Part shown: one piece after another, positions 4,203 to 60,435 of the stretch | Layout of the letters: each line of letters starts with the position of its first letter | How positions within the stretch are numbered: position 1 is the stretch's first letter | DNA from: Macrostomum lignano | Taxonomy: Eukaryota | Assembly (NCBI GenBank): GCA_002269645.1 | Contig: NIVC01000022.1 | Location: 310,001 to 374,000 of the forward strand | DNA length: 64,000 nt | Direction: 5' to 3' | Made by a program: the position numbers and the translations under genes | Notes under the pieces: model-generated | What the model saw: only the letters and a program-made list of their open reading frames with translations | Told to the model about the DNA's origin: nothing | Database searches by the model: none

Positions 4203-17823
<13,621 letters not shown>

Positions 17824-19529: not shown

Positions 19530-19609
19530 GCCGGCTCTGTGTCTGTGTGTCTGTCTGTCTGTATGTCTGTCTGTCTGTCTGTCAGTCTGTCTGTCTGTCT
19601 GTCTGTCTA

Positions 19610-19640
<31 letters not shown>

Positions 19641-19716
19641 GTCTATCTGTCTGTCTGTCTGTCTTAGTGTCTTAGTGTCTGTCTTAGTGTCTTAGTGTCT
19701 TAGTGTCTTAGTGTCG

Positions 19717-19796
<80 letters not shown>

Positions 19797-19799
19797 GCC

Positions 19800-19858
<59 letters not shown>

Positions 19859-19930
19859 GTGTCTGTTTATCTGTCTGTCTGTCTTAGTTTGTCTGTCTGT
19901 CTGCCTGTCTGTTTGTCTGCCTCAGTGTCT
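19530..19930. repeat. (CTGT)n microsatellite with CTTAGTGT interruptions
   Basis: Direct reading. Confidence 0.95.
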
Positions 19931-24294: not shown

Positions 24295-25122
24295 ATCCCA
24301 GATCCTCAGACTGAGCAGCCAGCCTCCCAGATCCTCAGACTGAGCAGCCAGCCTCCCAGATCCTCAGACTGAGCAGCCAGCCTCCCAGATCCTCAGACTG
24401 AGTAGCCAGCCTCCCAGATCATCAGTTGCTGAGCCAGCCTCCCAGATCCTCAGTTGCTGAGCCAGCCTCCCAGATCCTCAGTTGCTGTGCCAGCCTCCCA
24501 GATCCTCAGTTGCTGAGCCAGCCTCCCAGATCCTCAGTTGCTGAGCCAGCCTCCCAGAGTGTCAGTTGCTGGGCCAGCCTCCCAGAGTGTCAGTTGCTGG
24601 GCCAGCCTCCCAGATCCTCAATTGCTGGGCCAGCCTCCCAGAGTGTCAGTTGCTGGGCCAGCCTCCCAGAGTGTCAGTTGCTGGGCCAGCCTCCCAGAGT
24701 GTCAGTTGCTTTGCCAGCCTACCAGAGTGTCAGTTGCTGGGCCAGCCTCCCAGATCCTCAGTTGCTGAGCCAGCCTCCCAGATCCTCAGTTGCTGAGCCA
24801 GCCTCCCAGATCCCCAGTTGCTGAGCCAGCCTCCCAGATCCTCAGCTGCTGAGCCAGCCTCCCAGATCCTCAGTTGCTGGGCCAGCCTCCCAGATCCTCA
24901 GTTGCTGAGCCAGCCTCCCAGATCCTCAGTTGCTGACCCAGCCTCTCAGATCCTCAGCTGCTGAGCCAGCCTCCCAGATCCTCAGTTGCTGGGCCAGCCT
25001 CCCAGATCCTCAGTTGCTGAGCCAGCCTCCCAGATCCTCAGTTGCTGACCCAGCCTCTCAGATCCTCAGCTGCTGAGCCAGCCTCCCAGATCCTCAGTTG
25101 CTGAGCCAGCCTCCCAGATCCT
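24295..25122. repeat. 28-bp minisatellite (GCCAGCCTCCCAGATCCTCAGTTGCTGA)
   Basis: About 29 copies ending ~90 nt before the PCCB ATG. Confidence 0.95.
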
Positions 25123-25210
25123 GTCCTCCCTCCCCGCCGCTCTGAGCCCTACAAAAGTGCATGCAGCGCACAGCCAATGCGTCGAGTTTCCAACGCCCAT
25201 TTATGCCAAA

Positions 25211-28200
25211 ATGCTCCGGTCCGGCATCCGCGGCCTGCTGTCCCTGCCCGGCTCCGCCCTGCCCGGCGCCCTGTCGCTGCGCACGACCTACTCGGCGGCG
25301 CTGACCCTGCGAGTGCGCGAAAAGATCGCGGATACCCGTCGCCGATCGCAAGAGGGCGGCGGCGCCAAGCGGATCGACGCCCAGCACCAGAAGGGCAAGC
25401 TGACCGCCCGGGAGCGAATCGAGCTGCTCATGGACCCTGGCAGCTTTCGCGAATACGACGCCTTCGTTGAGCACGACTGCATCGACTTCGGCATGGAAAA
25501 GTCCAAGACCCCGGCCGACAGCGTGGTGACGGGACACGGCCTCATCCACGGCCGGCCGGCGTTCGTGTTCAGCCAGGACTTCACCGTCTACGGTGGCAGC
25601 CTCTCGCTGGCCCACGCCAAGAAGATTTGCAAGGTTTGCTTGCTGAAAAGTTTTCTTCCGGCATCTTTGTTACATTTTTATTTGTGACGTCATCATTCAT
25701 TATGACGTCATTTTTATCTTGGGTTACGTCATCCACCCATGCCAGCTAAATGGCGTCAAATTTAGAGATTCTTTGTCGAAGTGTCGGACTGTGAATAATT
25801 TTCAGAGAACTATTTCTTTTAGTTAAATCAGGGGTGGGAAAACTCCAACCTGTGGGCCATATGCGGCGCTATATCCGGCACTCAGGTCCTTGGACACTTT
25901 AGACTGGCAATCCGCTCTTCTCAGTTATCTCCTCTCCCCTCCTCCCTCTCCTCTTCTCTCCTCTCATCCCATGTAAACTCTCTTATCTTATCTCCTCTTC
26001 TCTCCCCCCCTATTTCCCCCCCCCCCTATCTCGTATCTTTGATGACGTCATTGTAGGTTTTCTATCTATGACATCATCTTTGGCATGTTTTTTGTTGGAT
26101 GAAGTCATCGTCGTCTAGTTATGACGTCATCGTGTCTACCAATTCTCGCCCCATAGGTGATGGACCAGGCCATGGTGGTCGGCGCCCCGGTCATCGGCCT
26201 CAACGACAGCGGCGGCGCCCGCATCCAGGAGGGCGTGGCCAGCCTGGCCGGCTATGCCGACATCTTCGAGCGCAACGTGCTGGCCTCCGGCGTGGTGCCG
26301 CAGATCTCCATGATCATGGGACCCTGCGCCGGCGGCGCCGTGTACTCCCCTGCCCTCACCGACTTCATCTTTATGGTGGAGCAGTCCTCCTACCTGTTCA
26401 TCACCGGCCCCGACGTGGTCAAGACTGTCACCGGTGAGCCCTGCTGCCCAGCGCCTTCGCCCGGCTCTCTGACTCTCCGTCTGACTCTGACTTCTCTCTT
26501 GCTGACTCTCTGACTCTGATATCCCTCTGTCTGACTCTCTGACTCGGACATCCCTCTACCCGACTCTCTGACATCCCTCTACCTGACTCTCTGACATCCC
26601 TCTACCTGACTCTCTGACATTCTCTATCTGACTCTCTGACATCCCTCTATCTGACTCTCTGACATTCTCTATCTGACTCTCTAACATTATCTGACTCTGA
26701 CATTCTCTATCTGACTCTGACATTCTCTATCTGACTCTGACATTCTCTATCTGACTCTGACATTCTCCATCTGACTCTGACATTCTCTATCTGACTCTGA
26801 CATTCTCTATCTGACTCTCTAACATTATCTGACTCTGACATTCTCTATCTGACTCTGACATTCTCTATCTGACTCTGACATTCTCTATCTGACTCTGACA
26901 TTCTCCATCTGACTCTCTAACATTATCTGACTCTGACATTCTCTATCTGACTCTGACATTCTCTATCTGACTCTGACATTCTCTATCTGACTCTCTAACA
27001 TTATCTGACTCTGACATTCTCCATCTGACTCTCTAACATTATCTGACTCTGACATTCTCTATCTGACTCTGACATTCTCTATCTGACTCTGACATTCTCT
27101 ATCTGACTCTGACATTCTCCATCTGACTCTCTAACATTATCTGACTCTGACATTCTCTATCTGACTCTGACATTCTCTATCTGACTCTGACATTCTCTAT
27201 CTGACTCTGACATTCTCTATCTGACTCTGACATTCTCTATCTGACTCTGACATTCTCTATCTGACTCTGACATTCTCTATCTGACTCTGACATTCTCTAT
27301 CTGACTCTGACATTCTCTATCTGACTCTGACATTCTCTATCTGACTCTCTAACATCAATCTGCTCGCAGCAATCTTTACAGTTTAATTTATCAGAAACTC
27401 TGGGCCTTTTGCTTTGTGTCTTCACCTCACCGTCGCTTCCTTCCCGCCGCACCCAGGCGAGAATGTCACCCAGGAGGAGCTGGGCGGCTCCAAGACCCAC
27501 ACCGTCACCTCGGGCGTGGCGCATCGCGCCTTCGAGAACGACGTCGACGCTCTGGCCACCCTGCGCGAGCTGTACACCTTCTTGCCGCTGTCCAATCGCG
27601 ACAGGGCCCCCATCCGCGAGTGTCAGGTGAGTCCGTTCTCGGAGTTCTCAACCTCTTGATCGATTTTCTAGCAGTTTGACCCAGTTGTTGACTCGCTGAC
27701 CCAGTTTTTGAGTCCCTGACCCAGTTATTGACTCACTGACCCAGTTGTTGACTCGCTGACCCAGTTGTTGACTCGCTGACTCACTGTTTACTTACTGACC
27801 CAGTTGTTGACTCGCTGACTCACTGTTTACTCACTGACCCAGTTGTTGCCTCGCTGATCCAGTTGTTAAGTCCCTGACCCAGTTGTTGACTCGCCGACTC
27901 ACTGTTTACTCACTGACTCAGTTGTTGACTCGCTGACCCAGTTGTTTACTCGCTGACTCACTGTTTACTCACTGACCCAGTTGTTGACTCGCTGACCCAG
28001 TTGTTGACTCGCTGACCCAGTTGTTGACTCTCTGACCCAGTTTTGACTTTCTGAGCCAGCTTTGACTCGCTGACCCAGTTGTTGACTCGCTGACCCAGTT
28101 GTTGACACACTGACACGTTTTCGAATTTAAGTGCTCATTTACCAACCAGGCTTGTGTGAATGATTTGCATGATCAAGACTTCCGACACGCTAAATTTTAA

Positions 28201-30527
28201 AAACCCATTAATTAATCTACTGACACATTTCAATTACCGCATTGACAAAAGCATTTTCAACTTAACTGGATAACTAATGCCACTTGCCTTAATCGATTTT
28301 ATTTGTAATATCATTCTAATTGGCACAAAATGAGTTTAAAATAATATTTTTATATTACAACAACATTTAAACTTGTAGGGTATGGTAAGTGCTTGCAGTT
28401 CAAAATTCGCAATTCAAATCCTTTCTGGGAGAAGCAGACAGCTGATTTTATTTAAATCCACGTATATTAATAAATAATGTAGTAATTATGATTCGTACTG
28501 TATATGGGTACATATTTGCAATTTGATTAGCAAAATTGCCCTTGACAAATGCATTGGCTTGTCTTAATTGACCCATCTCCTGATTCATTGACCCACTCAC
28601 TGACTCATTGATTGACCCAACCACTGATTCATTGACCCACTCACTGACTCATTGATTGACCCAACCACTGATTTATTGACCCTCCCACCGACAGATTGAC
28701 CCAAACACTGATTCATTGACTCACTCACTGACTCATTGATTGAACCAACCACTGATTTATTGACCCTCCCACCGACAGATTGACCCAAACACTGATTCAT
28801 TGACCCACTCACTGACTCATTGATTGACCCAACCACTGATTTATTGACCCTCCCACCGACAGAATGACCCAACCACTGATTCATTGACCCACTCACTGAC
28901 TCATTGATTGACCCAACCACTGATTTATTGACCCTCCCACCGACAGATTGACCCAACCACTGATTCATTGACCCACTCACTGACTCATTGATTGACCCAA
29001 CCACTGATTTATTGACCCTCCCACCGACAGATTGACCCAACCACTGATTCATTGACCCACTCACTGACTCATTGATTGACCCAACCACTGATTCATTGAC
29101 CCACCGGCCACTCCCTGATTCATTGACCCACCGGCACCCCTTGATTCATTGACCCACCGGCACCCATTGATTCATTGACCCACCGGCCACCCCCTGACTC
29201 ATTGACCCACACGTTGACCCGCAGGACTCGCCAGACCGCGTGGTGCCGGCCCTGGACACGGTGGTGCCCCTGGAGACGACTAGCGCCTACGACATGCTCG
29301 ACGTGATTCGTGGCATCGTTGATGAAGAGGAGTTCTTTGAAATCATGCCCAAGCACGCCAAGAACATCGTGATCGGCTTCGGCCGGATGCACGGCCAAAC
29401 CGTTGGTTTCCTTGGTAACCAGCCCAAGGTGGCTGCCGGCTGCCTGGACATCAACGCGTCCGTCAAGGGCGCCCGGTTTGTCCGCTTCTGCGACGCCTTC
29501 AACATCCCGCTGGTGACGCTGGTTGACGTGCCTGGCTTCCTGCCCGGCACCCAGCAGGAGTTCAATGGCATCATCAAGCACGGCGCCAAGCTGATCTACT
29601 CCTACGCCGAGGCCACCGTGCCGAAAATTACCGTCATCACGCGCAAGGCCTACGGCGGCGCTTACTGCGTTATGAGCTCCAAGTGAGTATTTTGCACGCG
29701 TGCTTTTAGTGTATATGACTAGCAGACAAGCCTTCCTTTGGCTTTTCTGACGCTTTTTTATTTTTACTCTAGCCTAGTGGTTAGAGCGTTGGACTCACAA
29801 CTCAGTGGTCGGGGGTTCGATTCTCGACCCGGTCGGAACATTTTTTGTCCTCAAGCAAGACACTTAACTCTGCATTGCTTCAGTTCACCCAGCTGTAAAA
29901 TGGGTGCCAGCATTAGCTGGGGTAATTCAGGGTTTGTGGTGACCCCCCCCCCCAGTCCTTGAGTTTTATTAATTTGTGAAAAAAATCCAATCAGCTTGGA
30001 AATCCTTTAAGTTTTGACTGTTTTCACTATTCAAAGCATATTTTCGATACATATCGGCAATAAAGCCCTCAAAGTGTCAAGCTATATGCCGCACTGCAAA
30101 GTGTTTTTCGATACATATCGAACAACTTTGCCTAGAGTCTGAAAAAAGGTTTGTAACATTGCTTTAACAAAATGATCTCTGTGAAGTATGTTTTCGATAC
30201 ATATCGTTGCAAGCTACTCTACATCTAAATGAAACAATTTTCAGGCACCTCCGCGGCGACGTGAACTACGCCTGGCCAAGCGCCGAAATCGCCGTGATGG
30301 GCGCCCAGGGTGCCGTTAAAATCATCTTCCGCGGCAAGGACCAGGCTCAGGCCGAGACTGACTACGTTGACAAGTTCGCCAACCCGTTCCCGGCCGCTGT
30401 CCGCGGCTACGTTGACGATATTGTGCAGCCGCGCTTCACCCGCCAGCTGATCTGCCGCGACCTGGAGCTGCTGCGCACCAAATCCCAGACCAACCCGTGG
30501 CGCAAGCATGGCAACATGCCGCTGTGA
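25211..30527 (+). CDS. PCCB: Propionyl-CoA carboxylase beta chain, mitochondrial, 536 aa. Exons 25211-25633, 26157-26433, 27457-27626, 29225-29682, 30245-30527
   Basis: Carboxyltransferase motifs [69 protein letters not shown] and KHGNMPL. Phases 0,1,0,2 all match. N-terminus is Arg/Ser/Leu-rich and transit-peptide-like. Confidence 0.97.
25829..25885 (+). mobile_element. Probable hAT (Charlie-type) transposon end fragment in PCCB intron 1
   Basis: CAGGGGTGGGAAAACT...GTGGGCCATATGCGGC resembles hAT TIR plus subterminal motif; no partner end found. Confidence 0.45.
26470..27355. repeat. 20-bp minisatellite (CTCTGACATTCTCTATCTGA), PCCB intron 2
   Basis: Fills almost the whole intron. Confidence 0.96.
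27672..28105. repeat. 20-bp minisatellite (GACCCAGTTGTTGACTCGCT), PCCB intron 3 5' part
   Basis: Direct tandem copies. Confidence 0.93.
28570..29215. repeat. ATTGACCC-based minisatellite with ~81-bp higher-order unit, PCCB intron 3 3' part
   Basis: Direct tandem copies running up to the acceptor at 29224. Confidence 0.93.
29770..29955 (+). mobile_element. tRNA-derived CORE-SINE copy in PCCB intron 4
   Basis: A-box TAGCCTAGTGG (29770), B-box GGTTCGATTCT (~29814). These are followed by TGTCCTCAAGCAAGACACTTAACTC...CAGTTCACCCAGCTGTAAAATGGG, which resembles the MIR/CORE domain. Confidence 0.75.
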
Positions 30528-33737: not shown

Positions 33738-36700
33738 ATGGACCAATCTTCACGTCCGGAATCGCCTGTGGATTTCTATTTCGCCCTGCAAGAAACAAAG
33801 CAGAGCCTTGACACTGAATTTGAGAACAATACAAATCTGCGGCACCATGTGCATCAGCTGGTGCGAGCTTTGAAGTGCAGGGCAGATAATGCGGCAGCTG
33901 CAAGGCAGCGCATGGCAGCTGCCATTGCTGCTGAGAACATCCTGCCAGACTTGAGCAAGCTGTCGATGGCCTGTCTTAGCAAAGGTGAAATGGCAGGATT
34001 ATAATTTCTTTTTAGACTCCTTCATTCACTTGAAGGGGTGTCTATGGCCTACAGCAGGACCACCAATAACATCTAGTTTGACACCTGGTCTGGTGCCCCT
34101 GTCACTTGATCTGACCCTTCTGACACCCCATTTAGCAGTCCTGACATCTGATTTATCACTCCTGACACCTGATTTAGCAGTCCTGACACCTGATTTAGCA
34201 GTCCTGACACCTGATTTAGCAGTCCTGATACCTGATTTAGCAGTCCTGACACCTGATTTAGCAGTCCTGACACCTGATTTAGCAGTCCTGACACCTGATT
34301 TAGCAGTCCTGATACCTGATTTACCAGTCATGATACCTGATTTAGCAGTCCTGACACCTGATTTAGCAGTCCTGACACCTGATTTAGCAGTCTTGATACC
34401 TGATTTAGCAGTCCTGATACCTGATTTAGCAGTCCTGATACCTGATTTAGCATTCCTGACACCTGATTTAGCAGTCTTAAAGCCCAATTTAGCATTCCTG
34501 ACACACCCGGTCGGTAGTTCTGACATCCTAGTTGTCTCCTGACGCACCCAATTTGGCACTCCCGATCCCCGATAATCTGACAACCTGTGAACCCCAAACG
34601 CAGCTGGTCAGCAGCAGCTCACCAAAGGCGAGTTCCAGCTGCTGCTGTGCACCCTGCACCTCTGCCACACCTGCACGGACGCCAGCCCTGAGTTCTCGGC
34701 TCATCTGGTCGGCTCGGGTGACGCTCTGCAGCTGCTGAAGTCCCTGCTGGCCGCGTGGGTGCAGCCACACCTGGAGAAACGGCTTGAGCAGCAGTCGGTC
34801 AGAGGCCTCAAGAGCTGCTTGAGCACCGTGTACAACGCGCTGTGGCAGGGCGAGGCCCGTGAAGTCTGCAGCGTGCTGGCACTGAAACAAATCGGCATTG
34901 TGGAAGCAGCCAACCAGCTGTTTCAACTGTCTGACAATAAGTACATCGTCCAGTTCAGCTTCCTCATTCTGGTGTACAGCTGCTCGGATGATGAGGCAGC
35001 CAGATTCCTGCAGCCGGGCGACTCCGGCCAGCAGCAGGAGCGGGTCGGGCGCCAGTTGCGCCAGCTGGTGGCCGGGCTGGGCCGGGTCTGCGCCGCCAAG
35101 CACTGGAGAACAGAAGACGGCTTTAGCATGGATGAGCTGCTTGCCTGTTAGCGGCGGGTCTCTGTGGAATCTTTTTTGTTGAGTTGCAGACTTTGTAGTT
35201 GAGCTTGGACAAGCAATAGACTCTCCGGTGGTGCATAAATATTTGTAGAAGCTGGGCTGTGCTGGAGTCGAAAAATGAAGACAGTTGATTGAGTGGAAAA
35301 TTCCGCGCATGCTCGTAGAATTAATTATAAGCAACATTTATTTACTACTCTACTAATAGTAGAAATACAGGGATAAAATTTTCTATATGCTACTAATATA
35401 AAATTTTCCAGTGAATTTTCTTAGAAATTAAATTGCACTACACGGCCCCACTTTCCCACCGCAGGCGTCCGGCGGTTCAGCCGCCGCCCCGACCACCGCC
35501 CGCTGCTGCTCCGCCAGGACTGTCTGGCTGAGCTGCAGCGGCTGCTGCAGACGGCGGCCGAGCGACCCGCCAGTCAGATCGTTGCCGCCTTCGAAATCGC
35601 GCTCTCGCTTTCATTGCACCCGACATGCGTCGACGCAGTCAGGCGAAGCCTCGGCTCGGAGCTGCAGTCGCTGGTAGTTGAGGGCGGCGGGCGGCTGGCG
35701 GACGCTGTCCGGTGCCTCTTGGGTGAGGATGATGAACAGCTGCAACCAGGGCATCGCCATGGACTTTATGGTGGTGGGAAACAGTCAGGAATTCTACATG
35801 ACTAAATTCCTACATTAATTTGGGAATCGGTATTGTTGGCACTTATTTTGGCGCGACAGACAGGCACTCATTTTAGAGATAGGAATTAGAGAGGAATAGA
35901 GATAGGATTGAGATAGGAAGCTGTCGGTTTTACAAGAACTATGATTGGGCATTGCCAATTTCTCACAGTTTGAAAAAAATTGCTGTTTTTTCTTTTGCTT
36001 TCTACTTAAAGTAGTCTGTCGCTGATTATTTTAGAATCGCCAGAGTCTGACTTGAAAGAGCAGCCGCGGTGGACAACTGATGCTTTTTCTGGTCCAAATG
36101 AAGGTCAGCCATCGCTTTCGCTTTGTCGAGTCGATTGTTGAATGTTTTTAAATAAGTTGTTTAATCAAGTTTTCTGATATTTTAGAACTCCGAACTTCAC
36201 AACGCAAAGCAAGGAGCAAAAATGAGAGAAAGGCGAATTCTCAGGCATCAGGTGAGAACTGGGAAAGAACTGGGTTTTTTCTTCTCAGAACTTCTCAGAA
36301 CTGGGTGGGCCCTGTCTTCGTTTCAACAAGTTAGCGGACTCAAAACGATCTGCTTTAGACTGCGGGGCTCCGTAAAGCGAGGCTGTAACTATACTGTAAA
36401 CGAAGCTGTAGCTTCTCTACGCGAGGCTGTAGCACTGTAGACAAGGCTGTAACTGCTGTAGCTAAGCGAGGCTGTAACTACTGTAATCGAAGCTTTAATT
36501 ACTGTAGGCGAGGCTGTAATTCCTGTAGGCAAGACCGTAACTACTGTAGGTAAGGCTGTAACTACTTTAGGTGAGGCTGTAACTACTGTAGTCGAGGCTG
36601 TAACTACTGTAGATAAGGCTGTAACTACTGTAGTCGAGGCTGTAACTACTGTAGATAAGGCTGTAACTACTGTAGTCGAGGCTGTAACTACTGTAGTCGA

Positions 36701-38419
36701 GGCTGTAACTACTGTAGTCGAGGCTGTAACTACTGTAGTCGAGGCTGTAACTACTGTAGTCGAGGCTGTAACTACTGTAGTCGAGGCTGTAACTACTGTA
36801 GTCGAGGCTGTAACTACTGTAGTCGAGGATAGGCTTACTATCTGCCTGTCACGCACCGATCATAAAAGCCTACCAATTGAATCGATTCCCAGGCCAGAAA
36901 CCCAGCGTTCTCCCATTGGAAAATGGCGCAGCCAGCGCCTACCTGGTGCTGAGCTGGTCCAGACAAGATTCCGATGCCGCACTTGCCAGATGGCTGGTCG
37001 CTAAGCTGAATGAAAACTGGCATCGGGTGAGCGCAGAGAAATCCACATCGTATTGAAACTGTCTAGCCAGCCTGCAGTTGTCCGGGTCTGTCTTAGTTAG
37101 CTTACAGCTGTCCGAGTCTGTCTTAGTTAGCTTACAGCTGTCCGAGTTTGTCTTAGTTTGCTTACAGCTGTCCGAGTCTGTCTTAGCTAGCTTACAGCTG
37201 TCCGAGTCTGTCTTAGTTTGCTTACAGCTGTCCGAGTCTGTCTTAGTTAGCTTACAGCTGTCCGAGTCTGTCTTAGCTAGCTTACAGCTGTCCGAGTCTG
37301 TCTTAGCTAGCTTACAGCTGTCCGAGTCTGTCTTAGCTAGCTTACAGCTGTCTGAGTCTGTCTTAGCTAGCTTACAGCTGTCCGAGTCTGTCTTAGCTAG
37401 CTTACAGCTGTCCGAGTCTGTCTTAGCTAGCTTACAGCTGTCCGAGTCTGTCTTAGCTAGCTTACAGCTGTCTGAGTCTGTCTTAGCTAGCTTACAGCTG
37501 TCCGAGTCTGTCTTAGCTAGCTTACAGCTGTCCGAGTCTGTCTTAGCTAGCTTACAGCTGTCTGAGTCTGTCTTAGCTAGCTTACAGCTGTCCGAGTCTG
37601 TCTAGTCAGCCTATAACCATTCGCTTGTTTTTGCTCTCCAATTACTTTGTAGCAACGTTTCAAAACAATAGTTCCTTTGGCCTTTTTCAAATATTTTCCC
37701 CAGACTATCGACTTGAGCACAGACTCAACTGCCGGACTCATCGATGGCTGCCGTGCCGTGATTCTGTGCGTCTCCAAGCCATACGAATTAAACAGCCTGT
37801 GCGAGTTTGGTGAGCTCGGCATCCTTGATAACTTACTTCAATCTGAATTATTATTTTCTCATAAAAAAGAAACATTACGCTAAAAAGCTACTTGTTAGTA
37901 GTTAACTCGCTCACTAAATCGGTAAAAATCTGGAATTTTTGATTTCCAGAAGCGCACCGGGCGGAGGTGCTGGAAAAACCGCTGGTGCCTCTGCTGTGCG
38001 GCGAAGGCTACCAACCGGGAAGCTGGCTGAGCCCCATCCTGGCCAGGTACTCAGCTCAGGCCGACCTGCTAATTGACTTCTCTAAACAGAGGGACCGCGC
38101 CAAGTCATTCAGCACTTTAATCGGTCGCCTTAACGGTCAGCTTGTCGCCACGTGGACAAAGACTGCTGCGCCAGCAGTTTCAGCAGCAGCTGTCGGTGAC
38201 TTCAGCGGCTGGAGCTCCGCCGAGGTCGGCAGGTGGCTGTCCGGGCACCAGCTTCCAGCTCAGCGGCTGGGCTACCTGAACGGCCGGCACCTGGAATTCC
38301 TGGTGGAGCTGAAGCGGGAAGCGCCCGAGGCATTTTACAGGATGCTGCGAGAGGACCTGCGGCTAGACAACTTCGAGTTGGTGTTTCGCTTCACCACTGC
38401 GGTGAAGAGCCTCGGCTGA
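33738..38419 (+). CDS. ARM-like helical repeat + TIR (TIR_2-type) + C-terminal SAM-like protein, 585 aa. Exons 33738-33984, 34604-35146, 35465-35722, 36893-37026, 37704-37809, 37950-38419
   Basis: Phases 1,1,1,0,1 match. TIR elements are YLVLSWS (betaA), AVILCVSKPYELNSLCEFEA (betaC-alphaC) and KPLVPL...YQPGSWL (betaD). The SAM-like part is WSSAEVGRWL...LNGRHL. The Leu-rich helical N-half is assigned as ARM-like by inference. Confidence 0.8.
34120..34510. repeat. 21-bp minisatellite (CCTGACACCTGATTTAGCAGT)
   Basis: TIR-gene intron 1. Confidence 0.95.
36395..36828. repeat. 21-bp minisatellite (GAGGCTGTAACTACTGTAGTC)
   Basis: TIR-gene intron 3, upstream of the acceptor at 36892. Confidence 0.95.
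37068..37605. repeat. 30-bp minisatellite (AGCTTACAGCTGTCCGAGTCTGTCTTAGCT)
   Basis: About 18 copies, TIR-gene intron 4. Confidence 0.96.
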
Positions 38420-38444
38420 GAGGGCGCTCGGAAATGTAGATGAA

Positions 38445-39315
38445 GATGGGAAGCTGGGGAAGATGTGAAGGATGAGGGAGATAAAAGGATGAAAGAGATG
38501 GGAGGATGAGTGAGATGGGAGGATGAGGTAGATGGAAGGATGAAGGAGATGGGAGGATGAGTGAGATGGGAGGATGAGGTAGATGGAAGGATGAAGGAGA
38601 TGGGAGGATGAGGGAGATGGGAGGATGGGGGAGATGAGAGGATGAGGGAGATGGGAGGATGAAGGAGATGGGAGGATGGGGGAGATGAGAGGATGAGGGA
38701 GATGGGAGGATGGGGGAAATGAGAGGATGAGGTAGATGGAAGGATGAAGGAAATGGGAGGATGAGGGAGATGGGAGGATGGGGGAGATGAGAGGATGAGG
38801 GAGATGGGAGGATGGGGGAAATGAGAGGATGAGTGAGATGGGAGGATGGGGGAGATGTGAGGATGAGGGAGATGGGAGGATGGGGGAGATGTGAGGATGA
38901 GGGAGATGGGAGGATGAGTGAGATGGGAGGATGAGGGAGATGGGAGGATGGGGGAGATGTGAGGATGAGGGAGATGGGAGGATGAGAGAGATGGAAGGTT
39001 GAGGGAGATGGGAGGATGAGAGAGATGAGAGGATGAGGTAGATGGGAGGATGAAGGAGATGGGAGGATGAAGGAGATGGGAGGATGAGAGAGATGGGAGG
39101 ATGAGAGAGATGGGAGGATGAGAGAGATGAGAGGATGAGGGAGATGGGAGGATGAGGGAGATGGGAGGATGAGGGAGATGGGAGGATGAGGGAGATGGGA
39201 GGATGAGGGAGATGGGAGTATGAGAGAGATGAGAGGATGAGGGAGATGGGAGGATGAGGGAGATGGGAGGATGAGGGAGATGGGAGGATGGGGGAGATGG
39301 GAGGATGAGAGAGGT
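38445..39315. repeat. Purine/G-rich 17-bp minisatellite (GGGAGATGGGAGGATGA)
   Basis: Essentially C-free on the + strand; starts ~25 nt after the TIR-gene stop. Confidence 0.96.
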
Positions 39316-42816: not shown

Positions 42817-43169
42817 CTGAGCTGTTGAGCTGCCCAATCTGTGACAGTCTTGAATAGGAATTGCCTGGCTTGTCAGCTAAAGTTTTGCACTGCTTTTACA
42901 TCTGTAGCCGTTTCTTTAATTTAAACTGGGTCCGAATGCAGAGCTGTTATTTTAGGCCATAGACATACTCGATGCCGATCGACTATTCGATGCTGACTAC
43001 CCCTGACTGTAGCAAGGGATGCTACTCAGACCAGAGGATGTTACTCAGGGGAGCAGTTTTATTGGTGCGGTGCATAGTGGGGTTTAGGAAACAAAAATGT
43101 TCTCATGGTCTCAGAGGGCATTCGGCGCCATGCTTTCTGAGCGTCACAACAGCAGTAATGTCTCAATAT

Positions 43170-44094
<925 letters not shown>

Positions 44095-53554: not shown

Positions 53555-54919
53555 CTACTCGTCCTTGTCTTTGCCGAACTCCTCGACCTCTTCCTCCTCG
53601 CCCTCCACGCTGTCGACGCCGACTTCTTCGTAGTCCTTCTGCATGGAGCCGAGTTCCTCGCGGGACTCGGCGAACTCGCCCTCTTCCATGCCTTCGCCGA
53701 CATACCAGTGCACGAAGGCGCGCTTCGAGTACATGAGGTCGAACTTGTAGGCCAGCCGGTCCCAGGCCTCAGCGATGGCGGTGGTGTTGCTCAGCATGCA
53801 GACCGCTCGAGGCACCTTCGCGAGGTCGCCTCCGGGCACCGCGACGGGCGGCTGGTAGTTAAGGCCGACCTTGAAGCCGGTCGGGCACCAGTCCACGAAC
53901 TGGATCTCGCGCTTGTTCTTGATCTTCTGGATCGAGTCGTTGACCTCCTTGGAGGAGACGTCGCCCCGGTAGAGCAGGCAGCAGGCCATGTACTTGCCGT
54001 GCCGGGGGTCGCACTTCACCATCTGGTTGCCAGGCTCAAAGCACGCGTTCGTGATGTCCCTGACCTTCAGCTGCTCGTGGTTGGCCTTCTCTATCGAGAC
54101 GATGGGAGCGTAGGTTGCCAGGGGGAAGTGGATCTTGGGGTAGGGCACGAGGTTGGTCTGGAACTCGGTGATGTCCACGTTGAGCGAGCCATCGAACCGC
54201 AGGGACACCGTGATGGAGGACACGATCTGCGCGATCAGGCGGTTCAGGTTGGTGTAGGTGGGTCTATCGAGTTCCAGATTTCTTCTGCAGACATCGTAGA
54301 TGGCCTCGTTGTCCACCATGAAGGCGCAGTCGGTGTGCGGCAGGGTGCCGTGGGTGCACAGGATGGCGTTGAATGGCTCCACCACGGCCGTGGACATCTG
54401 CGGCGCCGGGTAGACGGCGAACTGCAGCTTCGCCCGCTTGCCGTACTCGGACGACAGCCGGTCGCACAGCAGCGAGGTGAAGCCGGAGCCCGTGCCGCCG
54501 CCGAAGGAGTGAAATATCAGGAAGCCCTGCAGGCCTGAGCAGTTCTCAGCCAGCCGGTTGACAATCTCGCGCACGGTGCCAATCAGCTCCTTGCCGACTG
54601 TGTAGTGGCCTCTGGCGTAGTTGTTGGCGGCGTCCTCTTTGCCGGAGATCAGCTGCTCCGGGTGGAACAGCTGGCGGTAGGTGCCGCAGCGAACCTCGTC
54701 GACCACGGTGGGCTCCAGGTCCACGAAGATGGTGCGCGGCACGTAGTGACCGCCGGGGGTCTCGGAGAAGAACGGCTCCTGCGAGTCGTCGCATTTCTCC
54801 CTGCCGGCCATCATGAGTCCGTCGGGCTGGATGCCGTGCTCGAGGCAGTAGAGCTCCCAGCAGGCGTTGCCAATCTGGATGCCGGCCTGGCCGACGTGGA
54901 TGGAGATGCACTCGCGCAT
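53555..54919 (-). CDS. TUBA: Divergent alpha-tubulin, 454 aa, intronless
   Basis: [30 protein letters not shown] and [15 protein letters not shown]; uninterrupted ORF; AATAAA on the - strand at 53319-53324. Confidence 0.98.
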
Positions 54920-57538: not shown

Positions 57539-60435
57539 TTAGTAATTGTCATCGCTGCTGGAATCGTATTCTTCATCACTTTCGCTGTAATCACTTTGTT
57601 CTTCGGACAGGTCGAAGATCGAATTGTCGAACTGGGAGCCGTCGAGTGAGTCAGAATCGGAATCGTCCGAATCGGCATCTTCAGATTCGGTATCGTCAGA
57701 TTCGGTATCCGTATCGGCATCTTCAGAGCTAGAATCGGCATCGTCAGAATCCGAATCGACATGGCCGACATCGACATCGTCAGATTCGGCATCGGCATCG
57801 TCAGAGTCGGCATTGGCATCATCAGAGTCGGCATCGGCATCGTCAGAGTCGGCATCGGCAGGGCCGGCATCGTCAGAGTCAGCATCGGCAGGGCCGGCAT
57901 CGGCATAGGCGTAGGCAGGGCCGACATCGGCATCGGCATAGGCAGGGCCGGAATCGGCATCATCAGAGTCGGCATTGGCAGGGCCGGCATCGTCAGAGTC
58001 GGCATCGGCAGGGCCGGCATCGTCAGGGCCGGCATCGTCAGAGTCGGCATCGGCAGGGCCGGCATCATTAGAGTCGGCATCGGCATAGGCAGTGCCGGCA
58101 TCGGCATCGTCAGAGTCGGCATCGGCATCAACATAATCGAAGTGAAAGTTGGCGTCGGCGTGTGAGTCGGCATTGTCCGCATTGACATCGTCAAGTTGCG
58201 AATAATCATTGACGTCACGAGAGTCGGCATCAGCATATATATCGTCGCTGTGATAGTCGGCATCAGCAAAGGAATCGTCGCCGTGAGAGTCGGCATTGGC
58301 ATCGTTGAGTTGAGCATCAGCATCGAGGTCATGAAAGTCGGCATCAACATAGGCATCGTCGCCGTGAGAGTCGGTATTGGCAACATCGAGATGGGAGTCA
58401 GCATCGTGGTAATGAGAGTTGGCATTAGCATCCACATCGTCGCCGTGTGCGTTGCCATTGAAATTGTCGACGTGAGAGTTTTCAGCGTCTTCAGAGTTGG
58501 AATCGACGCCAGCTTCAACGTCGGAGTCCGTTTCGAAAGTGTTTGTGTCGATCTGAACAAATGGCAGAGCTTGCGGCTGCAAGTCGACTTGGGCCTCCTG
58601 AGCTTCGAATTCACCTTCCTCGAACTCGAACAAGTCGGCAAAGCCGAACGCTTGGTCGATTTGGCCGCCGTCGCTTCCGCTGTCGCTGTCGTCTTCATCA
58701 TCGTCGTCATCCTCGTCGTTGCCGAAATCGTTGTTGACTTCGTCGTCGCTGATGCCGGTGTCGGTGGCTGCATCGGCGGCCGTGGGGTCGGCGACAGCCG
58801 CCGGAAGCTCCGGCAATGGCTCATCGTTAGTGACAATGTCGGAGGCGACGCCGAGGCGCAGGTGGATGGAGCCAAACGGCCGTCTGTCATACGGGCACAG
58901 CCGGCTCTGGCCGGTCCATGCGCGCAGACAGGGCGGACAGAACTGATGTCCCGGACAGGTGTCCGGCGTGGCTACAGGGCCGGAGAGTTGTTCCAGGCAG
59001 ATCGGGCAGGACACCTGAGCGGAGGAAGAAAAGGGGAATACAAAATAATTTGTCTTCTAACAGTTGCTGCAGACTCAGAAGGAGCAAAAACAAGGCAAAA
59101 GGAGTGCCGATACGAGCAATGTAGCGAAACTGACGCCTAGCATAAGCGCCGATATGTAGCGAAACTGACGCCTAGCATAAGCGCCGATATGTAGCAAAAC
59201 TGACGCCTAGCATAAGCGCCGATATGTAGCGAAACTGACGCCTAGCATAAGCGCCGATATGTAGCGAAACTGACGCCTAGCATAAGCGCCGATATGTAGC
59301 AAAATTGACGCCTAGCATAAGCGCCGATATGTAGCGAAACTGACGCCAAGTAAAAGCGCCGATATGTAGCGAAACTGACGCCTAGCATAAGCGCCGATAT
59401 GTAGCGAAACTGACGCCAAGTAAAAGCGCCGATATGTAGCGAAACTGACGCTTAGCATAAGCGCCGATATGTAGCGAAACTGACGCCAAGTAAAAGCGCC
59501 GATATGTAGCGAAACTGACGCCTAGCATAAGCGCCGATATGTAGCGAAACTGACGCCTAGCATAAGCGCCGATATGTAGCAAAATTGACGCCTAGCATAA
59601 GCGCCGATATGTAGCGAAACTGACGCCTAGCATAAGCGCCGATATGTAGCGAAACTGACGCCAAGTAAAAGCGCCGATATGTAGCGAAACTGACGCCTAG
59701 CATAAGCGCCGATATGTAGCGAAACTGACGCCAAGTAAAAGCGCCGATATGTAGCGAAACTTGGCGCTAAATCCAATAAAGACAGCCTAAATAAGTGGCA
59801 CGAAACAGAGCCATCTGCTCAGCCCCTCTCACCTGCAGCCTAGCAGACTCAACAATCTCCTCATTGCCCGGGCGCCGAATTCTTAATTTGGCCAGACTGG
59901 CGCCGCAGCCTAGGCCCGGACAGCGGCCGGCGCGACCGGACGGCGCCGAATCGAGCCAAGTGGCCAGACAGGCCAAGTGGCAGCGGTGCAACTGGCAGGA
60001 CTCGGCGCTGACCACACCTGAGGAGTCTGCGGCAATGCCGCCAGCCAAGCAGATGGCGCAGGTATCGGCCGGGAGAGTCGGTGGCGACCCGGGTCGCTGT
60101 TGGGCATTGTCGGCGCCGAGGCGGGGCAGCTTGCTGGCGGTCGGGCCCAGCGACAACCATGATGCTGATGATGATGATGATGATGATGAAGTTGATGGCG
60201 CGGTGATGTCTGCTGGTACAGGCCGCTTCTTCGGCCGGCACAGCTGGCAGAGCGGGCGGCCACTGGATGATGAGAAAGTCGCAGAGGTGGCAGCGGCCGG
60301 CTGAAACAGGCTGCCAGTGCAGTGAGGATGAGCGGCTAGTAGGCAGGCTGAGCAGCGCAGGTGAGCAGCTCCAGCGGCAATGCCAGCCTCGCAGCCAATG
60401 CAGGTGAGGGCCTCGCCGATGGCAACAGCAGCCAT
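57539..60435 (-). CDS. PHD-RING-RING protein (putative E3 ligase) with a long Asp/Ala/Ser acidic tail, ~692 aa. Exons 60435-59833 and 59014-57539
   Basis: PHD-like CIGC...CSACLLAAHPHC...CQLC. RING1 CAIC...CQLHRCHLAC..W...CPGLGC. RING2 CPICLEQL...TPDTCPGHQFCPPCLRAW....CPYDRRPF resembles the PHRF1/SCAF11 RING. Donor CAG|GTGAGA and acceptor CGCTCAG|GTG, both phase 0. Confidence 0.8.
59118..59762. repeat. 35-bp minisatellite (ATGTAGCGAAACTGACGCCTAGCATAAGCGCCGAT), ~18 copies, RING-gene intron
   Basis: Head-to-tail copies with two alternating variants; no spacers. Confidence 0.96.

What the first reader, a model, noticed from the sequence alone, without database searches (positions are those of the whole stretch)
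33738..38419. ARM-TIR-SAM protein: SARM1 parts in a different order, with the candidate catalytic glutamate retained
SARM1 is ARM-SAM-SAM-TIR. This 585-aa model is helical repeat -> TIR -> single C-terminal SAM-like domain, with no transmembrane segment or LRR. The alphaC motif reads SLCEFE across the exon 5/6 junction (GAGTTTG|AA), matching the SxxCxxE pattern that holds the catalytic Glu of NAD+-cleaving TIR domains in SARM1, plant NLRs and bacterial Thoeris. The Glu is only visible after splicing. It is a candidate SAM-oligomerising, ARM-gated NADase in invertebrate immunity or cell death. Similar architectures may occur in other invertebrates; enzymatic activity is inference.
Basis: partly seen in the sequence, partly recalled or inferred. 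Interest (0 to 1): 0.72.

Follow-up and report, generated by a model that had tools for sequence, protein, structure and literature searches.

The report
Divergent flatworm ARM-TIR-SAM gene
This is a real gene of the flatworm Macrostomum lignano that encodes an unusually diverged copy of an already catalogued, widespread but functionally untested animal protein family (armadillo repeats, then a TIR domain, then a SAM domain); the glutamate that SARM1-type enzymes need is present, but that alone does not show it is an enzyme.

Summary
The gene is real. The correct model has 8 exons and 630 aa, identical to NCBI PAA93734.1 (Macrostomum lignano).

Confirmed:
- The order ARM repeats, TIR, single C-terminal SAM.
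- No transmembrane segment or LRR.
- Junction 37809|37950, which splits the GAA codon of E475.
- E475 aligns with SARM1 E642 (hhalign probability 95%).

The architecture is not new. At least 130 relatives share TIR then SAM, in molluscs, brachiopods, nemerteans, amphioxus and flatworm paralogues. Earlier surveys call them 'ARM-TIR' and 'TIR-SAM'. A 2026 preprint already lists this TIR as glutamate-positive but untested.

That glutamate occurs in over 70% of all TIR domains, so it predicts little. In the preprint, four isolated TIRs from the core family were inactive in E. coli and one related oyster TIR made cADPR.

This copy is a strong outlier:
- It keeps 34 of 65 family-conserved positions; its paralogues keep 57-61.
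- It lacks the invariant Tyr (SARM1 Y568).
- Its BB loop is shortened and lacks the glycine.
- All SAM positions are intact.

Best reading: a SAM-oligomerised TIR signalling protein with doubtful catalysis. It is a new member of a known kind, of modest interest.

The parts
33738..33984 (+). Exon 1 (start codon ATG 33738-33740; aa 1-83, start of the ARM-repeat domain)
   Evidence: open frame with a GT donor; the translation is identical to PAA93734.1; conserved in copy L001.
34604..35146 (+). Exon 2 (ARM-repeat domain)
   Evidence: AF2 helical repeats have pLDDT mostly above 90.
35465..35722 (+). Exon 3 (last ARM repeats, to about aa 350)
   Evidence: A weak importin-alpha ARM alignment covers aa 326-373 and runs across the exon 3/4 junction.
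36035..36103 (+).
   Evidence: In frame, AG/GT, phase 1. Present in NCBI PAA93734.1 and in UniProt A0A1I8IT36. Conserved in L001. AF2 pLDDT is below 50.
36186..36251 (+). It is included in some annotated models and not others.
   Evidence: In frame, AG/GT, phase 1. Present in the 630-aa NCBI models. Absent from UniProt A0A1I8IT36. Conserved in L001.
36893..37026 (+). Exon 6 (end of the linker, then TIR beta-A and alpha-A; the TIR starts near 36928)
   Evidence: 'YLVLSW' replaces the family motif 'HVMISYxW'.
37704..37809 (+). Exon 7 (TIR beta-B, shortened BB loop at 37704-37730, alpha-B, beta-C and the start of alpha-C, '...NSLCEF' plus the first base of the Glu codon)
   Evidence: The exon is 100% identical in copy L001.
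37809..37951 (+). Split codon of E475: G at 37809 and AA at 37950-37951, across the 140-nt intron 7 (37810-37949, GT...AG). This is the candidate catalytic glutamate.
   Evidence: One search gives the codon coordinates. One search aligns it with SARM1 E642. Searches show Glu in 99% of the family at this column. Searches give the published 0.2 A structural match to ThsB E85.
37950..38419 (+). Exon 8 (rest of the TIR to about 38164, a short linker, the SAM domain at 38192-38416, and the stop TGA at 38417-38419)
   Evidence: All ten family-conserved SAM-region positions are kept.

Best explanation
Identity (high confidence). This is a Macrostomum lignano gene with 8 exons encoding a 630-aa cytosolic protein. 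It has N-terminal armadillo repeats (aa 6-350), a disordered linker (351-406), a TIR domain (407-546) and one C-terminal SAM domain (556-630). It is a lineage-specific, strongly diverged paralogue of a widespread ARM-TIR-SAM family found in molluscs, brachiopods, nemerteans, amphioxus and flatworms. It is not a SARM1 orthologue.

Mechanism (inferred). The fully conserved SAM domain drives homo-oligomerisation, or hetero-oligomerisation with the canonical paralogues in the same animal, and so brings TIR domains together. The ARM repeats act as a protein-binding or autoinhibitory module.

Catalysis in this copy. The alpha-C glutamate (E475) is retained. However, the family-invariant Tyr (SARM1 Y568) is lost, the BB loop is 4-7 residues shorter and lacks the glycine (SARM1 G601), and 'GWLG' has become 'SWLS'. 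I therefore think the TIR of this copy more likely works as an assembly or regulatory subunit with weak, altered or no NAD+ cleavage than as a SARM1-like NADase.
For: Identity.
- The translation matches PAA93734.1 exactly.
- A second copy has the same exon structure.
- There are four genomic copies in this species.

Family.
- 284 homologues have E <= 1e-3.
- Source names cover several phyla, and all are 'uncharacterized'.
- In the 71-member alignment, Pfam finds TIR_2 in 71, Arm in 35 and SAM models in some.

Domains.
- ARM: E 4.5e-36 against PDB and Foldseek matches to APC-ARM.
- TIR.
- SAM.

Glutamate. E475 aligns with SARM1 E642.

Divergence.
- The window protein keeps 34 of 65 family-conserved positions. 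Paralogues P0006, P0008 and P0013 keep 57-61.
- The hhalign alignment leaves a 4-residue gap opposite SARM1 E596-E599 and puts T445 opposite G601. SARM1 residues E596, K597 and G601 are reported as important for catalysis (PMC7075850).
- AF2 confidence drops to 58-66 over beta-B and the BB loop.
- All ten SAM-region positions are conserved.
- Between two recent copies, the TIR and SAM regions carry 2 nonsynonymous changes in 505 sites. The ARM and linker regions carry 17.5 in 919 (Fisher p = 0.027).
Against: - E475, C472, Y466, A476, K484 and P488 in alpha-C to beta-D are all retained, as is an Asp that aligns with SARM1 D594 in two of three alignments. A working but remodelled active site is therefore not excluded.
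- W416 could stand in for the missing Tyr.
- A related oyster TIR (26% identical to the window TIR) makes cADPR in a Glu-dependent way.
- The negative results for core-family TIRs came from isolated domains without the SAM, and the assay covered only three cADPR isomers and NAD+ loss.
- Oligomerisation, hetero-oligomerisation and any ARM role are inferred by analogy, not shown.
- I had no model coordinates, so the pocket geometry was not inspected.
Confidence: 0.45

Rival explanations
1. This is an active NAD+-cleaving or cyclising TIR enzyme, a functional analogue of SARM1. SAM oligomerisation assembles the composite TIR active site, E475 is the catalytic residue, and the ARM domain holds the TIR inactive until a signal arrives.
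For: - E475 aligns with SARM1 E642 and lies 0.2 A from ThsB E85 in the preprint's structural screen.
- The family TIR profile matches enzymatic TIRs best: Cat1 1.5e-9, RPS4 6e-7, plant ADP-ribosyl cyclase 6e-6, TIR-1 and SARM1 about 1e-4. TLR1 scores 2e-3 and MyD88 0.03.
- The family consensus keeps the equivalents of SARM1 Y568, D594, G601 and E642 at 89-100%.
- An oyster relative makes cADPR in a Glu-dependent way.
- The domain set is the same as SARM1's, and hSARM1 is the top Foldseek hit for the full-length model.
Against: - The Glu is present in over 70% of all TIR domains and does not track activity.
- All four tested TIRs of the core cluster were inactive.
- This copy lacks the Tyr and the BB-loop Gly and has a shortened BB loop.
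- The Trp of the SARM1/plant 'W-x-x-x-E' motif is Asn in the family and Leu here.
- No sequence similarity to SARM1's ARM domain was detected. The ARM best hits are Vac8, ODAD2 and beta-catenin.
- The top SARM1 Foldseek hit has a TM-score of only 0.23, because several separate domains match.
Confidence: 0.3
2. This is a redundant duplicate drifting towards loss of function in a recently polyploid genome. It still has an open frame but is under little constraint.
For: - There are four near-identical copies in the assembly, one of them a truncated model of 553 aa.
- dN/dS between two copies is about 1.16 overall (19.5 nonsynonymous against 5.5 synonymous changes) and about 1.3 in the ARM region.
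- The ARM 'A-x-N-D-x-N-K' motif, the N-terminal myristoylation signal and many TIR motifs have been lost.
Against: - The 1893-nt frame and all 14 splice sites are intact in two copies.
- TIR and SAM are significantly better conserved than ARM between copies (p = 0.027).
- Every SAM family position is kept.
- AF2 folds all three domains with confidence.
- The dN/dS value rests on only 25 substitutions.
Confidence: 0.12
3. This is a classical non-enzymatic TIR adaptor. It signals only through heterotypic TIR-TIR contacts with Toll-like receptors or MyD88, and the conserved Glu is structural.
For: - Animal ARM-TIR proteins have been proposed as adaptors or regulators in immune-gene surveys.
- Scaffold TIRs (TRIF, MAL, MyD88, Hydra TRR-2) are among the Foldseek hits, with scores similar to the enzymatic TIRs.
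- M. lignano has LRR-TIR proteins that could act as partners.
Against: - Sequence profiles rank enzymatic TIRs above TLR and MyD88 TIRs.
- The family conserves several residues of the SARM1 pocket, not only the Glu.
- The shortened BB loop would also disturb classical TIR-TIR assembly.
Confidence: 0.13

Closest known systems
ARM-TIR(-SAM) family of invertebrates. Earlier names and sources: 'ARM-TIR' proteins in mollusc immune-gene surveys (PMC9334734); the 'TIR-SAM' combination in amphioxus (PMC2575513); the TIR cluster represented by Arion A0A0B7AZE4 in Hurieva et al. 2026 (bioRxiv 10.64898/2026.04.20.719644). It is probably one of the 'ecTIR-DC' families of Gerdol et al. 2017. That last link is from my memory; the paper is not in the library.
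   Same: - The same three domains in the same order.
- The N-terminal region alone finds 25 family members.
- The TIR and SAM regions together find 130.
- The SAM signature W..V..WL...G...L...AP..FY is fully kept.
- The alpha-C core C-x-x-E-A is kept.
   Different: - Only 34 of 65 conserved positions are retained.
- There is no N-terminal MG myristoylation signal; 38 of 71 relatives have one.
- The BB loop is shorter, the invariant Tyr is lost, and the ARM 'NDxNK' motif is lost.
- Its TIR is so diverged that the preprint places it in its own cluster, A0A1I8IT36.
SARM1 / dSarm / TIR-1 (ARM-SAM-SAM-TIR NAD+ hydrolase)
   Same: - The same three domain types.
- The Glu aligns with E642, and an Asp aligns with D594.
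- hSARM1 is the top Foldseek hit for the full-length model.
- Both TIRs are of the TIR_2 type.
   Different: - The domain order is permuted: the TIR is internal and the SAM is C-terminal.
- There is one SAM domain, not two.
- The SARM1 BB-loop motif E(R/K)LEAG is absent, and W638 is not conserved.
- The SAM is closer to liprin, ETV6 and SHANK SAMs than to SARM1's (E 0.09).
- The ARM is closer to Vac8 and beta-catenin.
- TIR identity is only about 18%.
Oyster (Magallana gigas) A0A8W8J0Z4, a 639-aa TIR protein shown to make cADPR (Hurieva et al. 2026, Table S4 #153)
   Same: - A related TIR subfamily ('HVMISY...VWMDIEQM...C.REA.YA...GWL').
- It is 41-43% identical to family members P0054 and P0061, and 26% identical to the window TIR (E 2e-9).
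- Its activity depends on the Glu.
   Different: - It keeps the full-length BB loop and the Tyr.
- The window TIR is closer to the four inactive TIRs (E 6e-13 to 3e-10) than to this active one.

Membership tests
SARM1 orthologues | Domain order ARM, SAM, SAM, then a C-terminal TIR | tested here: not met
   The order is ARM (6-350), TIR (407-546), then a single SAM (556-630). It is collinear with the genome and conserved across phyla.
SARM1 orthologues | SARM1-type TIR motifs: the BB loop E(R/K)LEAG, 'SYRR', and W638 four residues before the Glu | tested here: not met
   The hhalign alignment has a 4-residue gap opposite E596-E599, T445 opposite G601, no Tyr opposite Y568, and Leu at the W638 position. 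The motif definition is from PMC7075850.
SARM1 orthologues | An ARM domain with the NMN/NAD+ allosteric pocket | tested here: inconclusive
   No sequence match to SARM1's ARM was detected. The closest ARM proteins are Vac8, ODAD2 and beta-catenin. Pocket residues could not be compared because no model coordinates were available.
ARM-TIR-SAM family (ARM-TIR / TIR-SAM proteins of invertebrates) | N-terminal armadillo repeats homologous to those of family members | tested here: met
   The N-terminal 395 aa alone hit 25 family members at E < 0.01. The family profile matches ARM proteins at 4.5e-36. AF2 plus Foldseek match APC-ARM with a target-normalised TM-score of 0.55-0.60.
ARM-TIR-SAM family (ARM-TIR / TIR-SAM proteins of invertebrates) | A central TIR_2 domain with the family signature (HVMISYxW, VWxD, MxGS, SxNCRxEAEYA, GWLG) | tested here: inconclusive
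   The TIR is homologous (158 of 165 proteins hit). However, only the C-x-x-E-A core, Y466, K484, P488, Y495 and W500-L501 are kept. The remaining family-signature motifs are changed or deleted.
ARM-TIR-SAM family (ARM-TIR / TIR-SAM proteins of invertebrates) | A C-terminal SAM domain with W..V..WL...G...L...AP..FY | tested here: met
   All conserved positions are kept. The sub-alignment is 24-42% identical to the window SAM. The profile matches SAM structures at E 8e-6. AF2 pLDDT is about 97.
ARM-TIR-SAM family (ARM-TIR / TIR-SAM proteins of invertebrates) | An N-terminal MGxxx[S/T] acylation signal (present in about half of members) | tested here: not met
   The window protein starts MDQSSR. 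Of 71 relatives, 38 start with MG.
Catalytic (NAD+-processing) TIR domains | A TIR (flavodoxin-like) fold | tested here: met
   The TIR-only AF2 model has pLDDT 81. Foldseek top hits are mostly TIR domains, including all of the best-ranked ones, with TM-scores up to 0.70.
Catalytic (NAD+-processing) TIR domains | A glutamate on alpha-C at the position of SARM1 E642 / ThsB E85 | tested here: met
   hhalign gives probability 95.2% with E475 opposite E642. The preprint's TM-align gives Glu 187 of A0A1I8IT36 at 0.2 A from ThsB E85. Residue 187 of that entry is E475 here.
Catalytic (NAD+-processing) TIR domains | An intact BB loop and AA loop that complete the composite active site on oligomerisation | tested here: not met
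   The BB loop is 4-7 residues shorter, its Gly and Ser are deleted, and the AA-loop Tyr is missing. AF2 confidence is low in this region.
Catalytic (NAD+-processing) TIR domains | Measured Glu-dependent NAD+ consumption or ADPR/cADPR production | not testable with these tools
   The preprint's Table S3 marks this TIR 'no', which I read as not tested. Four core-family TIRs were inactive and one oyster relative was active.
SAM domains | A small helical bundle whose sequence profile matches SAM | tested here: met
   Helices 564-573, 586-598, 600-609 and 616-629. The profile matches liprin-beta, ETV6, SHANK and SARM1 SAM domains. Pfam SAM_1, SAM_2 or SAM_3 hit 3-9 relatives each, but not the window protein itself.
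SAM domains | Self-association into a polymer or ring | not testable with these tools
   No multimer prediction or experiment was available.

The most novel reading that the evidence does not exclude
The ARM-TIR-SAM family may be a second SARM1-like class of SAM-assembled, often membrane-anchored (N-myristoylated) NAD+-processing immune sensors in invertebrates. On this reading, the Macrostomum copy is a pseudo-enzyme subunit. It has kept a perfect SAM domain but a degraded ARM and TIR. It would co-assemble with the catalytic paralogues and tune or poison their activity, as a natural dominant-negative regulator.
Probability: 0.1. Interest if true: 0.6.

Novelty: new member of a known kind. Interest (0 to 1): 0.3.

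Why it matters
Until recently SARM1 was the only animal TIR enzyme known. A 2026 preprint reports that many animal TIR domains make cADPR.

The ARM-TIR-SAM family has the same three building blocks as SARM1 in a different order. It is widespread in invertebrates and has no known function. If its TIR needs the C-terminal SAM to become active, that would explain why isolated TIRs of this family scored negative. It would also give a second, independent example of SAM-driven TIR activation.

This flatworm copy is a naturally degraded version that keeps only the SAM intact, so it could serve as a natural control or regulator. M. lignano can be studied by RNAi. In itself, though, the gene is an ordinary, already annotated family member.

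Tried and rejected
1. The three word-index homologue searches (full length, TIR plus SAM, and the family profile) returned only M. lignano copies and one snail protein. The family appeared only with the exhaustive HMMER search.
2. Pfam run directly on the window protein gave only a sub-threshold TIR_2 hit, with no Arm or SAM. The domains had to be established through family profiles and structure prediction.
3. The full-length Foldseek search was dominated by ARM proteins, plus a low-TM multi-domain SARM1 hit. It did not inform on the TIR, so a TIR-only model was made. That search did not separate enzymatic from scaffold TIRs.
4. I considered a SARM1 orthologue with mis-ordered exons. I rejected it because the order is collinear in two genomic copies and conserved across phyla.
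5. I considered the BB-loop deletion being an artefact of the exon 6/7 junction. I rejected it because the deletion lies inside exon 7, the model equals the annotated protein, and exon 7 is identical in the second copy.
6. dN/dS between copies rests on only 25 substitutions, so it is suggestive only.
7. A literature search for the gene identifiers found nothing. Gerdol et al. 2017 (the ecTIR-DC classification) is not in the library, so I could not check which ecTIR-DC family this is.
8. No model coordinates or PAE values were available, so I could not examine the Glu orientation, pocket geometry or ARM-TIR contacts.

Full report
**What is there.**

The window is eukaryotic DNA with GC-rich exons, AT-rich spacers and introns full of minisatellites. 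On the + strand, an ATG at 33738 and a TGA ending at 38419 bound a spliced frame.

The eight-exon, 630-aa translation is 100% identical over its whole length to NCBI PAA93734.1 (BOX15_Mlig026716g1) of the flatworm Macrostomum lignano. UniRef names this protein only 'TIR domain-containing protein'.

A second genomic copy, fetched as L001, has the same eight exons with every GT-AG site intact. Exon 4 is also present in an older UniProt model, but exon 5 is not. Exon 5 may therefore be a cassette exon. Both mini-exons fall in a linker that AlphaFold2 predicts as disordered.

The base G at 37809 joins AA at 37950-37951 to make the GAA codon of E475. Intron 7 is GT...AG, 140 nt long and 98.6% identical in the second copy. 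The residues after the junction continue the family motif C-x-x-E-A.

**Domains.**

The protein alone gives only a sub-threshold Pfam TIR_2 match (E 4.3e-5, 24.4 bits against a cut-off of 28), with no Arm or SAM match. An exhaustive HMMER search found 284 homologues at E <= 1e-3. Most are 600-750 aa long.

I built a 71-member alignment of full-length relatives. Three sets of results came from it.
- ARM: its profile matches solved ARM-repeat proteins at E 4.5e-36 (Vac8, ODAD2/ARMC4, beta-catenin).
- TIR: its TIR part matches solved TIR domains. Enzymatic ones rank first: Cat1 1.5e-9, RPS4 6e-7, a plant ADP-ribosyl cyclase 6e-6, and TIR-1 and SARM1 at about 1e-4. TLR1 scores 2e-3 and MyD88 0.03.
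- SAM: its C-terminal part matches SAM domains: liprin-beta 8e-6, ETV6 1e-5, SHANK 2e-4 and SARM1 SAM 0.09.

AlphaFold2 with this alignment gives mean pLDDT 82 and pTM 0.76. The model has helical repeats at 6-350, disorder at 351-406, a TIR at 407-546 and a small helical bundle at 556-630 with pLDDT about 97. Foldseek against PDB returns human SARM1 first (E 6e-5), but with a TM-score of only 0.23, because several separate domains match. APC-ARM follows with a target-normalised TM-score of 0.55-0.60.

A TIR-only model has pLDDT 81. It hits mostly TIR domains, including all of the best-ranked matches: TRIF, SARM1, SPARTA (TM 0.64-0.70), MAL, RPS4 and Hydra TRR-2. There is no transmembrane segment or LRR.

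**The glutamate.**

A profile-profile alignment of the family TIR with human SARM1 TIR gives probability 95.2% and E 2.7e-8. It places E475 opposite E642. It agrees with Table S4 of Hurieva et al. 2026 over residues 563-700, the part that table lists.

Glu occupies this column in 99% of the 70 aligned relatives. The same preprint screened about 16,000 eukaryotic TIR models by TM-align against ThsB E85. It lists UniProt A0A1I8IT36, a fragment model of this gene, with 'GLU 187' at 0.2 A. Residue 187 of that entry is E475 here.

**Why that is weak evidence for an enzyme.**

[quoted passage not shown] That includes TLR1, 2, 6 and 10, for which no activity had been reported (PMC7075850).
- The 2026 preprint tested four isolated TIRs from the core ARM-TIR cluster: Chlamydomonas, Branchiostoma lanceolatum, spotted gar and Phallusia. 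None made a cADPR isomer or depleted NAD+. The Branchiostoma domain is 97% identical to two B. belcheri members of the cluster represented by my family member P0015.
- A related oyster TIR was active and needed its Glu.
- The authors note that isolated domains lack native oligomerisation. That caveat matters here, because the constructs lacked the SAM.

**This copy is an outlier.**

Of the 65 alignment columns conserved in at least 80% of relatives, the window protein keeps 34. Its M. lignano paralogues keep 57-61.

Lost:
- The invariant Tyr after the beta-A Ser, which corresponds to SARM1 Y568.
- 'HVMISY'.
- The BB-loop Gly and Ser, within a deletion of 4-7 residues. In the SARM1 alignment there is a gap opposite E596-E599 and T445 opposite G601. 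SARM1 residues E596, K597 and G601 are reported as important for catalysis.
- 'GWLG', now 'SWLS'.
- The ARM 'A-x-N-D-x-N-K' motif.
- The N-terminal MG acylation signal that 38 of 71 relatives carry.

Kept:
- The alpha-C core: Y466, C472, E475 and A476.
- K484, P488, Y495 and W500-L501.
- Every conserved SAM position.

Between two 97%-identical genomic copies, dN/dS is about 1.2 overall. TIR and SAM together carry 2 nonsynonymous changes in 505 sites, against 17.5 in 919 for ARM plus linker (p = 0.027). Only 25 substitutions are involved, so this is suggestive only.

**Interpretation.**

The gene is a lineage-specific, diverged paralogue of a conserved ARM-TIR-SAM family. It is not a SARM1 orthologue.

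I infer that the SAM brings TIR domains together and that the ARM repeats bind a protein partner or restrain the TIR. For this copy I rate a regulatory, weakly catalytic or non-catalytic role (0.45) above an active SARM1-like NADase (0.30), a pure TIR-TIR adaptor (0.13) and a decaying duplicate (0.12). None of the mechanistic steps is shown.

**Comparison with what is known.**

- 'ARM-TIR' proteins are a named class in mollusc immune-gene surveys, with 11 genes in Aplysia (PMC9334734).
- An expressed 'TIR-SAM' combination was reported in amphioxus in 2008 (PMC2575513).
- 'ecTIR-DC' families conserved across invertebrates were defined by Gerdol et al. 2017, as cited in PMC6321704. That paper itself is not in the library.
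- The preprint's cluster tables already contain this protein's TIR and its paralogues.
- Named relatives come from bivalves, gastropods, a nemertean, Lingula and Branchiostoma. All are 'uncharacterized'.

The C-terminal SAM is under-annotated. The preprint lists only 'TPR' (the ARM clan) for most members.

**Verdict.**

For this particular copy, the missing active-site loops weaken it. This is a new member of a known kind, and I score interest at 0.3.

Noticed in passing
window 34120-34504, 36378-36828, 37059-37603, 38444-39313: Three introns of the gene each hold a minisatellite: 21 bp x 18, 21 bp x 21 and 30 bp x 18. A 17-bp x 51 array begins 25 nt after the stop codon. Intron lengths differ between the two genomic copies (641 against 513 nt and 677 against 525 nt), consistent with changes in repeat copy number.
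   Followed up: partly
window 36186-36251 (exon 5) and 36035-36103 (exon 4): Both mini-exons are phase-1 symmetric, so skipping either keeps the frame. Exon 5 is absent from UniProt model A0A1I8IT36 but present in the NCBI 630-aa models. It may be an alternatively spliced cassette exon that encodes a basic disordered stretch.
   Followed up: partly
window about 25100-29700, + strand: The upstream neighbour on the same strand looks like a propionyl-CoA carboxylase beta / carboxyltransferase gene (ORFs at 25157-25687 and 29240-29686). An older UniProt model (P0002, Pfam PF01039) fuses it to the first 249 aa of the TIR gene. This is probably a read-through annotation artefact.
   Followed up: partly
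family alignment A1 (relatives, not the window): 38 of 71 ARM-TIR-SAM relatives begin with MG, 36 of them fit MGxxx[S/T/A/C/G], and 10 have a nearby Cys. This suggests N-myristoylation, with or without palmitoylation, and membrane anchoring for much of the family. The window protein starts MD and lacks the signal.
   Followed up: partly
Hurieva et al. 2026, Tables S2 and S4: Green-algal proteins (Chlamydomonas, Gonium, Ostreococcus) sit in the same TIR cluster as the animal ARM-TIR proteins. The Chlamydomonas TIR is 58% identical to an amphioxus TIR. This points to horizontal transfer or very strong conservation.
   Followed up: no
window 53555-54919, - strand: A single uninterrupted 454-aa ORF reads as an alpha-tubulin ('[15 protein letters not shown]...'), an intronless gene. 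The identification is by eye only.
   Followed up: no
window 57539-59014, - strand: A 491-aa ORF starts with a RING-finger-like Cys pattern (CPICLE...CPPCL) and continues into a long Asp-rich repetitive tail.
   Followed up: no
window 5800-6900, 16660-17420, 19600-19900, 43060-44000: Long arrays of a GTCT/CTGT-type repeat recur across the window on both strands. They read as 'CLSVCLSV...' or 'DRQTDRQT...' in ORF lists and inflate the ORF list with artefacts.
   Followed up: no
M. lignano assembly GCA_002269645.1: Four genomic copies of this gene are annotated (Mlig026716g1, g2, g4 and Mlig004768g1), about 97% identical at the protein level. I take this to reflect recent genome duplication in this species, which is background knowledge rather than something tested here. 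One model is truncated to 553 aa.
   Followed up: partly
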